Below are positions 10,410 to 13,672 of a DNA stretch of 64,000 bases, piece by piece (the stretch's first letter is position 1; every line of letters begins with the position of its first letter). The position numbers and the translations under genes are program-made. Location: NCBI GenBank assembly GCA_977017575.1, contig CDRNVI010000143.1, positions 310,001 through 374,000 on the forward strand, in the 5' to 3' direction. The stretch is from Paramoeba atlantica (taxonomy: Eukaryota > Protista > Discosea). The notes under the pieces are model-generated. The model was not told the DNA's origin. It made no database searches and was given only the letters and a program-made list of their open reading frames with translations.

Positions 10410-10461
10410 CAAAGAGGCTGCAACATTTGTTTTTGTGAACAAATATGAAAGCCTTTTTAGT
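10410..10461 (+). repeat. 52-bp direct repeat, left copy (att-like dyad)
   Basis: 48/52 identical to 13621-13672; contains ATTTGTT-N6-AACAAAT. Confidence 0.85.
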
Positions 10462-11123
10462 TTTTTTTCAATATATCCATTGCAAATTTACCACCCCCCC
10501 CCCCAAAACCAAAATAGACCTTGCCCCTCTCCTATTTTATTCCATCCCTAAAACCTTGTCAACACAACCCCACCCCCCCTCCAATATTTAACCACCCCCC
10601 ACAGTTATCCATATTATCCAACAGGGTTGACCCATCCAAAGAAAAATAGAAGAAAAAAAGAAGAAAAAAAGAAAAAAGAAAAGAAAAGAAAAAAAAGAAA
10701 AAAGAAAAGAAAAAAAAAGAAAAAAAGAAAAGAAAAAAAGAAAAGAAAAAACTTTTGAAAGAGTAAATCGACAAGAAGGTAGTTCAACATAATTAGGCTT
10801 TAAAAAAAGAAAGAAAAGAAAAGAAAAGAAAAAAGAAAAGAAAAAGAAAAAAAAAAAAAGAAAAAAGAAAAAAAAAAAAAAGAGAAAAAAAAAGAAAAAA
10901 AAAAGAAGAGAAAAAACCTTTGAAAGAGCAAATTGACAAGAAGCGGTTCAACTCAGACCAAGTTTAAAAAGAGAAAGAAAAAAGAGAGAAGAGAAAAAGA
11001 GAGAGAAAAAGAGAGAGAAAAAGTCAAGAAAGCCTTCCTTGTCGCCTTTCATCATTGACGTCATCATTGGCAACTCGACATTTTCTTTTTTTTTTTGAAG
11101 CGAAGAACTGAGTGCAAGAAAGA

Positions 11124-12660
11124 ATGAACAAATCATTGCAAGAAATGAAAGAGTCGATGAATGAGAGACAGAAGGGAGGAAAAAAGCAAAAAGAGTCATA
11201 CTGGAGGGTGTTTGAGCGGTTCTTGGCAGAACCCAGCAACAATGTCTTGTTTCATCCTGCAACTTCAAACAGACAAGAAATTTGTCGAGTCATGAAGAAA
11301 TTCGCCTTCAATATGAAGAAGGAAAATGAAGACTCTTACTGCGATTCTTCAATGAAAACAATCTGGAATTCTGTTGCAAAACAAATTAACGAAAAGTTTT
11401 TTCAAGAACCAACAACAAACCATCAACATTTTTGAGGATCCTGCTTTCAAAGCAGCACGAGCAGCACGAGACACAGCACGATCTCTGATCCAAAAAATCC
11501 CTGAAAAGAGAAAAGTTTCTGCCAGTGCAGTCACTGCAGAAGAAGCAATTGTGATGGTAAATGTTTGGGGGATTGACACTCCTCGAGGACTAAACATGAC
11601 CCTTTTTATCGTTGCAGGCTTGTGTCTTGGCTGTCAAGGGAATGAGCAAGCACATTTTCGATTGAGTCACTTTCAATGGGAAACAAACGATTTTGGAGAA
11701 AAAACTGGTGTTTTGATGTATCAAGCCATCCAAGATAAAAACCACCAGGGAGGGGATCAACCTATGCCTCCGCCAAAAGATTTGGAAAGAAGTAGTGTTT
11801 TGGATGGTGTCTTTATCGATCTTTACGCCGAAATGACTGCAAAACGTCCAGCACACCCAAAGGATGATCGTGTTTTTCTTCAGCCAAACAACACTCATGG
11901 TGCTTACCTCAAATCTGGGAATTGGTATAAGACCCAGCCTGTGGGAGAGAAAACAACCGGCAATTGGTTTAAAGAGACAGCCCAAAAAATAGGAATTGCC
12001 ACCGATCAAATTGGAAAGAGATTCACAAACCAGAGTTTGCGCTCCACTCTCGTCACTCTTTCTCTTGCTGCTGGAGGAAACCCCCATATGGTCATCAAGT
12101 TGACTGGACATGGCTCGATCTGATCCCTTGAATTCATACACTGATCCATCAGCTGAACAACGAGGTAAACTCAAAAATAATGCATTTGGTGTTAGTGCAC
12201 AATCTTCTTGTCCATCACCAGTTCTCTCATCAACTGTCTCTTCATCTGAACAACCAGTCCCACTTCCAGTCCCATCTCGACCCTCAGTTCCAGTTCCATC
12301 TCGACCCTCAGTTCCAATTTCATCTCGACCCCCAGTCCTATCTCGACCCTCATCTCAATCCCCAGCCCCATCTCGATCCACAGTCCCTTAGTTCCAATTC
12401 CATCTCAATCCCCAGCCCCATCTCGATCCCCAGCCCCATCTCGATCCCCAGTTCCATATCAATCACCTCAAGTTGTCCCATTCCGACCTTCTCCAAGGAG
12501 CAGTCCCAGTCATCATCCCCTCGTTGGTTTTCCATCCCCTCGTCCTCGAACACAGCAGTTTGTTTGTTCCCAACCACCCCCAACTCCTCCTGAAAAAGAT
12601 TTATTTGAAGAAGCTGGTGGACTTCCAGTATATATATATCAACAAGCACCCAGTCTTTGA
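11124..12660 (+). pseudogene. Crypton-type (DUF3504-like) tyrosine recombinase with Pro/Ser-rich tail, frameshifted
   Basis: Motifs GCQGNE (Arg box, R to Q), QDKNHQGG, WYKTQPVG, FTNQSLRST and TGH-ARSDPLNS-Y (Tyr at His+9 after correcting a 1-nt insertion near 12110). Further frameshifts near 11410 and 12388. Confidence 0.85.
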
Positions 12661-12958
12661 GTCAGGAGAAGAGAATATGTCATACTATTTTCGGTTTGCT
12701 CCTGGGATGGAGTCGATGGGACCTTTGTATCAACAGAGTTTTGTTCCTTCTTGTTCTCCTCTGGGAGGGGCAAATATTGGTGGGGGAAACCATTTTTAAG
12801 ACTGTACCTTCAAGTTTTCAGAACCAAAAAAGAAGAAACAAAAGATTGAAGGAAAGGAGAACCTTGACAAAAGTGTCGGTGAATAATAAAAATTTTGATC
12901 ACTTTATATCATCAAACTTTTCTCCAATAAAAAGATTCTCGTCCAAAAAAAAGTCAGG

Positions 12959-13074
12959 AAAATTGATGGCAGACGCATCTTTCGTCCAGAGAAAAGTTCG
13001 AGTTGAGACGAGCCGAAGGCGAGTCGAGAACGAGAACTTTTCTCTGGACGAAGGATGCGTCTGCCATCAATTTT
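12959..13074. repeat. Long inverted repeat / hairpin, 41-bp stem
   Basis: 12959-12999 pairs with 13034-13074 with a single G.T; the 34-nt interior is itself structured. Confidence 0.95.
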
Positions 13075-13263
13075 TCGACTTTTTTTTCAGGACTCGAACT
13101 TTTGTACCCGAAAAAAAGAAAAAAAAAGAAAAGAAAAAAGAAAAAAAAAAAGAAAAAAAAAAAGAAAAAAAAAAAGAAAAAAAAAGAAAGAAAAAAAGAA
13201 AAAAAGAAAAAAAAAGAAAGAAAAAAAGAAAAAAAGAAAAAAAGAAAAAAAGAAAAAAAGAAA

Positions 13264-13295
<32 letters not shown>

Positions 13296-13308
13296 AGAAA
13301 AAAAAAAC

Positions 13309-13381
13309 AGCCCCCGGCGGGGCTCGAACCCGCGGCCACTAGATTAAGAGTCTAGCGCTCTACCGACTGAGCTACGGAGGC
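13309..13381 (-). tRNA. trnK-CUU: tRNA-Lys(CUU)
   Basis: GCCTCCG...CTAGA-CTCTTAA-TCTAG...GCGGG-TTCGAGC-CCCGC-CGGGGGC-T cloverleaf. Confidence 0.95.
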
Positions 13382-13620
13382 AATTTGATAAAAATCGAAA
13401 AAAAAATGGGTTTAAAAAGGATTGGGGGAGATACGACACCACCACGAAAACCTCCCCCCCCTTCCTTCAAGTCACCAACCAAATTGAAACAATTGTGGAA
13501 ATTATGTATTTTGGCAATATGTCCCCCATCCCCCCCAACAAAATTGGTGCTACTGTGGCGTATTTACGGAGGTGGTGTGCGAGTCAAAACCCAATCTTCA
13601 TGTCCATTCTGGAAAATTCC

Positions 13621-13672
13621 CAAAGAGGCTGCAACATTTGTTTATGTGAACAAATATTATAACCTTTTTAGT
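13621..13672 (+). repeat. 52-bp direct repeat, right copy (att-like dyad)
   Basis: 48/52 identical to 10410-10461, 3211 bp away. Confidence 0.85.

What the first reader, a model, noticed from the sequence alone, without database searches (positions are those of the whole stretch)
10410..13672. Candidate excisable YR cassette: att-like 52-bp direct repeats around a Crypton-type recombinase, a hairpin and a tRNA-Lys gene
Seen: two 52-bp direct repeats (48/52 identical) 3211 bp apart, each with ATTTGTT-N6-AACAAAT, enclosing the YR gene, a 116-nt hairpin and an intact tRNA-Lys(CUU). Known: YR crossover sites (loxP, dif, FRT) are inverted arms around a 6-8 bp spacer, and described Cryptons have only short terminal direct repeats. 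Inference: recombination between the repeats would release an ~3.2-kb circle carrying the recombinase and a tRNA, i.e. a eukaryotic integrative element with long att sites and tRNA cargo. Caveats: the arms are short (7 bp) and the two spacers differ at one base.
Basis: partly seen in the sequence, partly recalled or inferred. Interest (0 to 1): 0.75.

Follow-up and report, generated by a model that had tools for sequence, protein, structure and literature searches.

The report
Dead Crypton relic in rDNA spacer
A broken copy of a Crypton-type recombinase gene, a tRNA-Lys gene and a long hairpin sit between two real 57-69-bp palindromic direct repeats just upstream of an 18S rRNA gene of an unidentified protist; the repeats look like recombinase target sites, but the cassette is dead, is the same in every rDNA unit seen, and was not shown to be mobile.

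Summary
A direct repeat (10398-10466 and 13610-13677; 52-bp core 48/52) occurs only twice in the window. It brackets a tyrosine-recombinase (YR) gene, a 142-nt hairpin and an intact tRNA-Lys(CUU). Each repeat is a 21-6-21 imperfect palindrome, as rare here as rRNA helices.

The YR belongs to the DUF3504/CryptonA clade: 28 of its 32 nearest full-length relatives match DUF3504. It is a pseudogene with frame changes, two in-frame stops, a mutated catalytic Arg and the catalytic Tyr out of frame.

The cassette lies 1.4-4.7 kb upstream of an 18S gene, in the spacer of a dispersed rDNA unit. A second unit on another contig is colinear for at least 19 kb and carries the whole cassette with the same flanks. 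A third YR copy and two further right-hand junctions are known only as proteins. So it multiplied by duplication of the unit, not by transposition. No empty site or independent insertion was found.

Best reading: a fixed, decaying Crypton relic. Whether the palindromes were its lox-like recombination sites (about 40%) or are rDNA-spacer elements such as promoter and spacer-promoter duplicates (about 35%) stays open. tRNA "cargo" is doubtful because tRNA genes cluster around these rDNA units. The look-up of encoding contigs closed mid-session, which blocked the decisive comparison.

The parts
10398..10466 (+). Left direct repeat (DR-L). The 52-bp core is 10410-10461. It is a 21-6-21 imperfect palindrome: arms 10411-10431 and 10438-10458, spacer 10432-10437 (TTTGTG).
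10642..11031 (+). Purine-rich tandem sub-repeats of about 160-230 bp upstream of the YR gene. Copy number differs between rDNA units; the second unit carries about 530 bp more here.
11056..11063 (+). TGACGTCA palindrome followed by CATTGG, about 60 bp upstream of the YR ATG. This is a likely promoter motif. A similar pair lies upstream of the related family-B gene in L004.
   Evidence: read from the sequence; inference
11124..12890 (+). Pseudogene of a DUF3504/CryptonA-type tyrosine recombinase. Lesions: a private frame change near 11405; the box-I Arg codon is now CAA (11635-11637); a frame change near 12120, shared with the second unit, lies just before the catalytic Tyr codon (12137); TAG at 12389; further frame changes in the Pro/Ser-rich repeats; TAA at 12797 inside the conserved C-terminal motif.
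12946..13087 (.). Long hairpin (59-nt arms, 24-nt loop) about 60 bp after the end of the YR reading frame. It differs at 3 of about 210 aligned positions from the second unit; one of these changes turns a G-T pair into G-C.
13110..13305 (+). Purine-rich low-complexity tract, (GAAAAAAA)n-like, largely absent from the second unit.
13309..13381 (-). Intact tRNA-Lys(CUU) gene followed by a T-run. It has the same orientation as the rRNA genes and as the other five tRNA genes of the window, and is identical in the second unit.
13610..13677 (+). Right direct repeat (DR-R). Arms 13622-13642 and 13649-13669, spacer 13643-13648 (TATGTG). It lies 240 bp from the 5' end of the tRNA gene.
6885..8987 (-). 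Context: the 18S rRNA gene whose upstream spacer holds the cassette. DR-L lies 1.4 kb and DR-R 4.6 kb upstream of its 5' end.

Best explanation
The cassette is the decayed, immobile relic of a CryptonA-type (DUF3504) tyrosine-recombinase DNA element. It lies in the upstream spacer of a dispersed rDNA unit of an unidentified AT-rich protist.

Shown:
- The gene is a Crypton-type YR pseudogene.
- The cassette, with both repeats, the hairpin and the tRNA gene, is part of the rDNA unit and was copied along with it by segmental duplication.
- The gene copies have since decayed independently.

Inferred: the two 48-bp palindromes (21-nt arms, 6-nt spacer) were the recombinase's lox/FRT-like sites. A circular form carrying one site would have recombined with a very similar site in the spacer (Campbell-type integration). 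That leaves two full sites in direct orientation, and recombination between them would once have released a circle of about 3.2 kb. Today this could happen only with a recombinase supplied in trans.

The tRNA-Lys gene is more likely a resident of the tRNA cluster around the rDNA than selected cargo.
For: YR family:
- Pfam gives sub-threshold DUF3504 (25.3 bits) and Phage_integrase hits on the largest piece.
- A profile search finds 1079 relatives.
- Of the 32 nearest full-length relatives, 28 match DUF3504, 24 match Phage_integrase and 5 match the QRICH1 N-terminal domain.
- The closest intact relative, P0005, has the same layout from N-terminal domain to C-terminal motif.

Decay:
- Lesions were mapped against P0005.
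- The box-I Arg codon is CAA in the window, a stop in the second unit, and still Arg in a third copy. The copies therefore decayed independently after duplication.

Segmental duplication:
- Window 2465-21560 is colinear with ENA contig ctg3999l, rRNA genes and both repeats included.
- Substitution identity is 96-100% across the cassette.

Site-like repeats:
- They are unique in the window and a rare 21-6-21 palindrome.
- They bracket the YR gene with margins of about 660 and 730 bp.
- In four DNA copies and two translated copies the only variable core base lies in the spacer.
- The left-versus-right differences lie outside the core, as expected for two similar but non-identical partner sites.
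Against: - Described Cryptons have 4-6-bp terminal direct repeats (PMC3212892). The only active Crypton observed uses a 5-bp match, CACCG/CAYCG (PMC9977147). Long full sites at both ends have no precedent.
- No empty site, no solo site and no independent insertion was found. Every locus seen has the same junctions.
- The family is low-copy: three contigs in a collection of about 15 billion protein sequences.
- The position upstream of 18S, with sub-repeats in between, fits promoter and spacer-promoter duplicates equally well.
- Taking the repeats as the ends makes a tRNA gene internal to the element, which is unusual for a eukaryotic transposon.
- The related family-B copy (L004) shows no comparable motif, but its upstream flank is cut by the contig end.
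Confidence: 0.45

Rival explanations
1. The palindromic repeats are cis-elements of the rDNA upstream spacer, for example a gene promoter and spacer-promoter pair, or paired enhancer, origin or fork-barrier sites bound by a dimeric host protein. An ordinary Crypton, with short and now unrecognisable ends, happened to insert between them next to a resident tRNA-Lys gene.
For: - Both copies lie upstream of the 18S gene in one orientation, at -1.4 and -4.6 kb, with tandem sub-repeats of variable copy number between them. This is the classical Pol I spacer layout (established knowledge of Xenopus, Drosophila and plant spacers; not tested here).
- The core is invariant across all copies apart from one spacer base, while outer positions differ, as for a protein-binding site under selection.
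- The motif is present in every rDNA unit that could be examined.
- tRNA genes flank the rDNA units generally, all on the same strand.
- It agrees with the 4-6-bp repeats known for Cryptons (PMC3212892, PMC9977147).
Against: - Two spacer elements would have to bracket the only YR gene of the spacer almost symmetrically by chance (roughly 10-15% by my estimate).
- A 48-bp palindrome with a 6-nt spacer is not a typical Pol I promoter.
- The motif is absent downstream of both 28S genes, which excludes the Pol I terminator version.
- Similarity stops right after the repeat instead of running on to a common start site.
Confidence: 0.35
2. One reading: a currently excisable integrative element whose own recombinase releases a 3.2-kb circle that carries a tRNA gene as cargo.
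For: Two full site-like repeats in direct orientation surround a YR gene. The tRNA gene is intact.
Against: - The YR gene carries frame changes and stops in all three known copies. The catalytic Arg is mutated here and the Tyr is out of frame.
- The two spacers differ at one base.
- The cassette is identical in arrangement in all units, with no empty site.
- The repeats share nothing with the tRNA gene.
Confidence: 0.05
3. The repeats are neutral leftovers of a local rearrangement, for example a duplicated piece of spacer or integration of extrachromosomal DNA by homologous recombination. They have no role for the recombinase or the host.
For: Only two copies per unit. The region is a graveyard of repeats: a DIRS-like element, a reverse-transcriptase ORF and satellites.
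Against: A chance-duplicated 57-69-bp piece would very rarely be a 21-6-21 palindrome (about 1 in 10,000 positions). The core shows no decay while outer positions differ.
Confidence: 0.1

Closest known systems
CryptonA / DUF3504-encoding Cryptons (Kojima and Jurka 2011, PMC3212892; fungal 'Glomhoppers', PMC13465315)
   Same: A single gene for a tyrosine recombinase of the DUF3504 clade with a QRICH1-like N-terminal domain. No reverse transcriptase. An element-sized unit of about 3 kb. Many copies in other genomes are likewise truncated or decayed and sit in repeat-rich regions.
   Different: Cryptons are described with 4-6-bp direct repeats or with no definable ends. Here the gene is bracketed by 57-69-bp repeats that are complete palindromic sites. 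A tRNA gene and a 142-nt hairpin lie inside. All copies are tied to rDNA units and multiplied by duplication of the unit.
CryptonF-1_cRei of Chlamydomonas, the only Crypton seen to move (PMC9977147)
   Same: Insertion and clean excision by site-specific recombination between a donor site and a similar target. This is the model assumed here.
   Different: Its match is 5 bp (CACCG/CAYCG), and it has many targets and rising copy number. Here the match is at least 37 bp, there is one locus type, and no activity was seen.
Simple tyrosine-recombinase sites (loxP, FRT, dif)
   Same: Inverted arms around a 6-8-nt spacer. Two sites in direct orientation make the DNA between them excisable as a circle.
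   Different: The arms here are longer and imperfect (21 nt, 16/21). No binding or cleavage has been shown, and the cognate enzyme is dead.
Bacterial integrative elements at tRNA genes
   Same: An integrase gene between direct repeats with a tRNA gene nearby.
   Different: There the repeat is the 3' end of the tRNA gene. Here the tRNA gene is wholly internal, 240 bp from the repeat, and shares no sequence with it.
Promoter and spacer-promoter duplicates and sub-repeats of Pol I intergenic spacers
   Same: Repeated elements in one orientation a few kb upstream of 18S, with variable tandem sub-repeats between them, present in every unit.
   Different: No start site has been mapped. The similarity is only 57-69 bp and palindromic, and a transposon gene and a tRNA gene lie between the copies.

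Membership tests
Crypton (CryptonA / DUF3504 type) | Tyrosine-recombinase catalytic domain with the R...HxxR...H/W...Y residues | tested here: met
   The domain aligns with intact relatives. The residues can be placed, but in this copy box-I Arg is Gln (Arg is kept in the third copy) and the Tyr is out of frame. So the feature is met as a pseudogene.
Crypton (CryptonA / DUF3504 type) | Match to Pfam DUF3504 (PF12012) | tested here: inconclusive
   This copy scores 25.3 bits against a cut-off of 29.7. Of its 32 nearest full-length relatives, 28 match at E-value 0.001 or better, best 1e-28.
Crypton (CryptonA / DUF3504 type) | No reverse transcriptase or other transposition gene in the element | tested here: met
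   The ORF list and Pfam scans of 10.4-13.7 kb show only the YR gene. The YR is unrelated to the DIRS-like YR at 53100-54470.
Crypton (CryptonA / DUF3504 type) | Short (4-6 bp) terminal direct repeats and no long repeats | tested here: not met
   If the repeats are the ends they are 57-69 bp. If they are not, the true ends cannot be seen.
Crypton (CryptonA / DUF3504 type) | Several copies at independent insertion sites | tested here: not met
   Three contigs carry the family. The one whose DNA was read has the same flanks for at least 19 kb.
Integrative element with att sites (bacterial type) | att repeat overlaps the end of the target tRNA gene | tested here: not met
   The repeat shares no sequence with tRNA-Lys, which lies entirely inside.
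Integrative element with att sites (bacterial type) | Empty site or circular junction | not testable with these tools
   No exact match to the 25-nt core pattern in JGI metagenomes. An ORF search across the right junction found only filled junctions. No reads were available.
lox/FRT/dif-type recombinase site | Inverted arms around a 6-8-nt spacer, two sites in direct orientation | tested here: met
   21-6-21 with 16/21 complementary and a perfect inner 7 nt. Four such places exist in 64 kb, two of them in rRNA or its transcribed spacer (ITS2).
lox/FRT/dif-type recombinase site | Bound and cut by the cognate recombinase | not testable with these tools
   Needs protein and DNA at the bench.
rDNA spacer promoter or repeated cis-element | Repeated in one orientation upstream of 18S in every unit | tested here: met
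   Positions -1.4 and -4.6 kb in two units. The right copy is also present in two more contigs, by translation.
rDNA spacer promoter or repeated cis-element | Transcription start at the element | not testable with these tools
   No RNA data.
Pol I terminator (Sal-box/Reb1 type) | The same element also lies downstream of 28S | tested here: not met
   No copy downstream of either 28S gene, even with 3 mismatches allowed.

The most novel reading that the evidence does not exclude
A CryptonA-type element that uses complete lox-like 48-bp palindromic sites rather than 4-6-bp matches, integrates site-specifically into the rDNA upstream spacer, and carries a functional tRNA gene. This would be a eukaryotic chromosomal counterpart of a 'floxed' integrative cassette, here caught shortly after its death and spread through the rDNA units.
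Probability: 0.2. Interest if true: 0.7.

Novelty: new variant of a known kind. Interest (0 to 1): 0.4.

Why it matters
The ends and target sites of CryptonA/DUF3504 elements are essentially undescribed. These elements are the source of the animal ZMYM and QRICH1 genes. If the 48-bp palindromes are the sites of this recombinase, they would be the first defined site for the clade. They would also give a compact recombinase-and-site pair that can be tested with the intact relative P0005. If they are instead rDNA spacer elements, the locus still documents an odd rDNA organisation: dispersed, diverged units, each with tRNA genes and a fossil transposon. Either way the claim of a live, excisable, tRNA-carrying element does not stand.

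Tried and rejected
- Looked for more copies of the motif in the window and in all fetched loci. Only the two per unit exist.
- Scanned JGI metagenome contigs for the core: none.
- Ran search for related loci with a YR alignment on metagenome, viral and prokaryote genome contigs: no relative confirmed. The first alignment was too diverse to use.
- Tested whether the repeat extends beyond 69 bp. It does not rise above shuffles, although both copies are followed by one of the window's four C-runs of 9 or more.
- Tested for a small-RNA gene at the repeats with Rfam at a permissive threshold: nothing.
- Folded the repeats as hairpins. The left copy is only modestly stable and the right copy is no better than shuffles.
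- A block of 39 residues that is nearly identical in the translated right junctions looked like a conserved island. I rejected this: the flanks differ because homopolymer indels shift the frame, so it is not evidence of constraint.
- Tested a Glomeromycota origin with primer sequences from memory: not supported. The organism stays unidentified, and a paper search for the sample ids found nothing.
- The bacterial promoter and terminator scan is not informative for a eukaryote.
The contigs of P0005, P0012, P0172, P0168 and P0169 could not be read.
- The broken gene was searched piece by piece.
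Full report

Yes.

- The 37-nt core of the repeat matches only at 10410-10446 and 13621-13657, even with three mismatches allowed; none is expected by chance.
- ATTTGTT-N6-AACAAAT occurs only at those two places.
- Local alignment extends the repeat to 10398-10466 and 13610-13677 (69 bp, one gap). The score is 90 against a maximum of 32 in 200 shuffles.
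- A self-comparison of the 9-kb spacer finds no other repeat pair outside low-complexity DNA and the gene's own Pro/Ser-rich repeats.
- The repeat does not extend further. Each copy is nevertheless followed within 28-57 bp by a run of eleven C. There are only four C-runs of 9 or more on that strand in 64 kb.

It has 21-nt arms, 16 of 21 complementary, around a 6-nt spacer, and the inner 7 nt are perfect. Only four positions of about 64,000 reach this, and the other two lie in rRNA or its transcribed spacer (ITS2).

The other parts also check out:

- tRNA-Lys(CUU) at 13309-13381 on the minus strand is intact.
- The hairpin is real and about 142 nt long: arms 12946-13004 and 13029-13087, dG -64.9 kcal/mol, z -14.

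**2. The recombinase**

The gene runs from 11124 to about 12890 on the plus strand and is in pieces. The pieces were searched apart.

Family evidence:

- The largest piece gives sub-threshold Pfam hits: DUF3504 at 25.3 bits (cut-off 29.7) and Phage_integrase at 16 bits.
- A profile built from this piece and two relatives finds 1079 proteins at E-value 0.001 or better among 1.84 billion.
- Of the 32 nearest full-length relatives, 28 match DUF3504, 24 match Phage_integrase and 5 match the QRICH1 N-terminal domain.
- Named relatives come from beetles, butterflies and an aphelid fungus.
- The gene is unrelated to the DIRS-like recombinase elsewhere in the window.

The closest intact relative, P0005 (521 aa, 52% identical), has the same layout throughout: N-terminal domain, catalytic domain, Pro/Ser-rich repeats and a C-terminal motif. 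Mapping P0005 onto the DNA shows these lesions in the window copy:

- a private frame change near 11405;
- the box-I Arg codon now reads CAA (11635-11637);
- a frame change near 12120, just before the catalytic Tyr codon (12137);
- TAG at 12389;
- more frame changes in the repeats;
- TAA at 12797 inside the C-terminal motif.

**3.

Rfam finds a complete eukaryotic rDNA unit on the minus strand: 28S at 2160-6199, 5.8S at 6521-6676 and 18S at 6885-8987. A second 28S lies at 61791-64000, along with two 5S genes and six tRNA genes, all on the minus strand. Five of the six tRNA genes lie within about 2 kb downstream of a 28S gene.

The cassette therefore lies in the upstream spacer of an rDNA unit. 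DR-L is 1.4 kb and DR-R 4.6 kb upstream of the 18S 5' end.

The rest of the window is a repeat graveyard. It holds a DIRS-like element with 178-bp inverted ends, a 985-aa ORF with a weak reverse-transcriptase match, and a 6-kb AT-rich satellite.

**4. Other copies**

The window's proteins occur identically on ENA contig ERZ24900291:ctg3936l.

- **Second unit.** Another contig of the same sample, ctg3999l (L002/L003), is colinear with window 2465-21560. It carries 28S, 5.8S, 18S, DR-L, the YR gene, the hairpin, tRNA-Lys, DR-R and a polyubiquitin gene. Substitution identity across the cassette is 96-100%, with indels in low-complexity tracts. This is a segmental duplicate of the rDNA unit, not an independent insertion, so it says nothing about the element's ends.
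- **Third YR copy.** P0172 lies on a 45.8-kb contig and is known only as protein.
- **Independent decay.** The three copies decayed separately. The box-I Arg codon is CAA here, a stop in L002 and still Arg in P0172. The C-terminal TAA here is Lys in L002, and P0172 has its own frame change. The frame change before the Tyr is shared by the window and L002, so it is older.
- **Further right junctions.** A search with the spurious ORF that crosses DR-R found two more contigs, P0168 and P0169. Both have the same sequence on both sides of DR-R, so both are filled junctions.
- **Variable base.** Across four DNA copies and two translated copies, the only variable base of the core is the second base of the spacer (T, C or A).
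- **Negative searches.** No empty site turned up. The motif is absent from JGI metagenomes. The search for related loci found no relatives in three collections.
- **Blocked step.** That was the decisive comparison.
- **Family B.** A second, 40%-identical YR family in the same sample (L004) is also decayed. It is about 95% identical at DNA level to a transcript in JGI 3300017035. Its upstream flank is cut by the contig end, and no comparable motif is seen there.

**5. What it most likely is**

Firmly supported: this is a dead Crypton-type gene fixed in the rDNA upstream spacer. It was copied with the unit and is now decaying. It cannot excise itself.

Open: what the palindromic repeats are.

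For their being the recombinase's sites:

- the lox/FRT-like layout and its rarity;
- the near-symmetrical bracketing of the only YR gene of the spacer;
- an identical core with differences only in the spacer and in the outer arms, as expected for two similar partner sites.

Against:

- Known Cryptons use 4-6-bp matches (PMC3212892), and the one active Crypton uses 5 bp (PMC9977147).
- CryptonA ends are simply undefined (PMC13465315).
- No empty site or independent copy was found.
- A tRNA gene would be internal to the element.

The main rival is that the repeats belong to the rDNA spacer, as a promoter and spacer-promoter pair or another paired protein-binding element. Both lie upstream of 18S in one orientation, with variable sub-repeats (10642-11031) between them, and they occur in every unit seen. 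The Pol I terminator version is excluded, because the motif is absent downstream of both 28S genes.

My weights are about 0.40-0.45 for 'former recombination sites', 0.35 for 'spacer elements', 0.1 for neutral leftovers, and 0.05 for a currently active element.

**6. tRNA as cargo**

The tRNA gene is intact and identical in both units. However, tRNA genes cluster around the rDNA units on the same strand. Its upstream leader also resembles that of tRNA-Thr(UGU). A resident gene is the simpler reading. The repeats share no sequence with it, unlike bacterial att sites.

**7. Novelty and verdict**

The recombinase is a new member of a known clade. The long palindromic direct repeats would be a new variant of Crypton architecture if they are the ends, and this is not shown. 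Interest is moderate (0.4): the structure is real and unusual, but the element is dead, its mobility is unproven, and an ordinary rDNA-spacer explanation remains.

The organism is an unidentified AT-rich microbial eukaryote. It is not human, and long ORFs read in the standard genetic code.

Noticed in passing
window 2160-8987 and 61791-64000: Two rDNA units on the minus strand lie about 59.6 kb apart and are not a homogeneous tandem array. Their overlapping 28S 3' parts are only 97% identical. The second unit is 99% identical to the unit on contig ctg3999l. This is dispersed, heterogeneous rDNA.
   Followed up: partly
window 840-911 and 59703-61536: Five tRNA genes (Thr-UGU; Met, Thr-AGU, His, Gly-UCC) lie within about 2 kb downstream of the two 28S genes, all on the rRNA strand.
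   Followed up: partly
window 23687-23805 and 49467-49585: Two 5S rRNA genes lie on the strand opposite to the rDNA, with about 290 bp of 84%-similar surroundings.
   Followed up: no
window 50399-54752: An apparently complete DIRS-like retroelement: 178-bp inverted terminal repeats (94% identical), a reverse-transcriptase ORF (51391-52776) and an open 457-aa tyrosine-recombinase ORF (53100-54473). It is unrelated to the cassette's YR.
   Followed up: partly
window 24496-29311, minus strand: An open 985-aa ORF with a weak reverse-transcriptase match follows two unknown ORFs of 254 and 226 aa in a region of 48% GC. It is probably another retroelement.
   Followed up: no
window 31046-37175: A 193-bp satellite of about 32 copies, about 99.5% identical and 18-21% GC. 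ENA contig ctg3936l appears to end at its edge.
   Followed up: no
window 9401-9700: Inside the otherwise 96-100% identical spacer, this 300-bp stretch is only 78-92% identical between the two rDNA units. Unexplained.
   Followed up: no
window 11635-11637; L002 about 9950; L004 1055-1966: Decay runs through CpG-type transitions. The Arg codon became CAA in one copy and a stop in another. Compared with the transcript copy P0002, family-B copy P0004 shows Arg replaced by stop, Cys or Gln. This hints at cytosine methylation or a RIP-like process.
   Followed up: partly
L004 643-1063, 4548-4968 (inverted) and 7017-7462: A 420-bp repeat starts with a T-run, and about 15 bp (CAACAAGATCCCTCC) appear duplicated on either side of the copy inserted in the family-B YR gene. 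It looks like a SINE-like retroposon (poly-A on the other strand) and is absent from the transcript copy L005.
   Followed up: partly
L004 2955-5500: A satellite with a unit of about 180 bp (80-88% identity between copies) directly follows the family-B YR relic.
   Followed up: no
window 17903-18456: A polyubiquitin gene (228-bp repeats) lies 4 kb beyond DR-R and is also part of the duplicated rDNA-linked segment.
   Followed up: no
window 10494 and 13734: Each direct repeat is followed by a run of eleven C, 28 and 57 bp after its end. These are two of only four C-runs of 9 or more on that strand in 64 kb. Alignment does not show homology there.
   Followed up: yes
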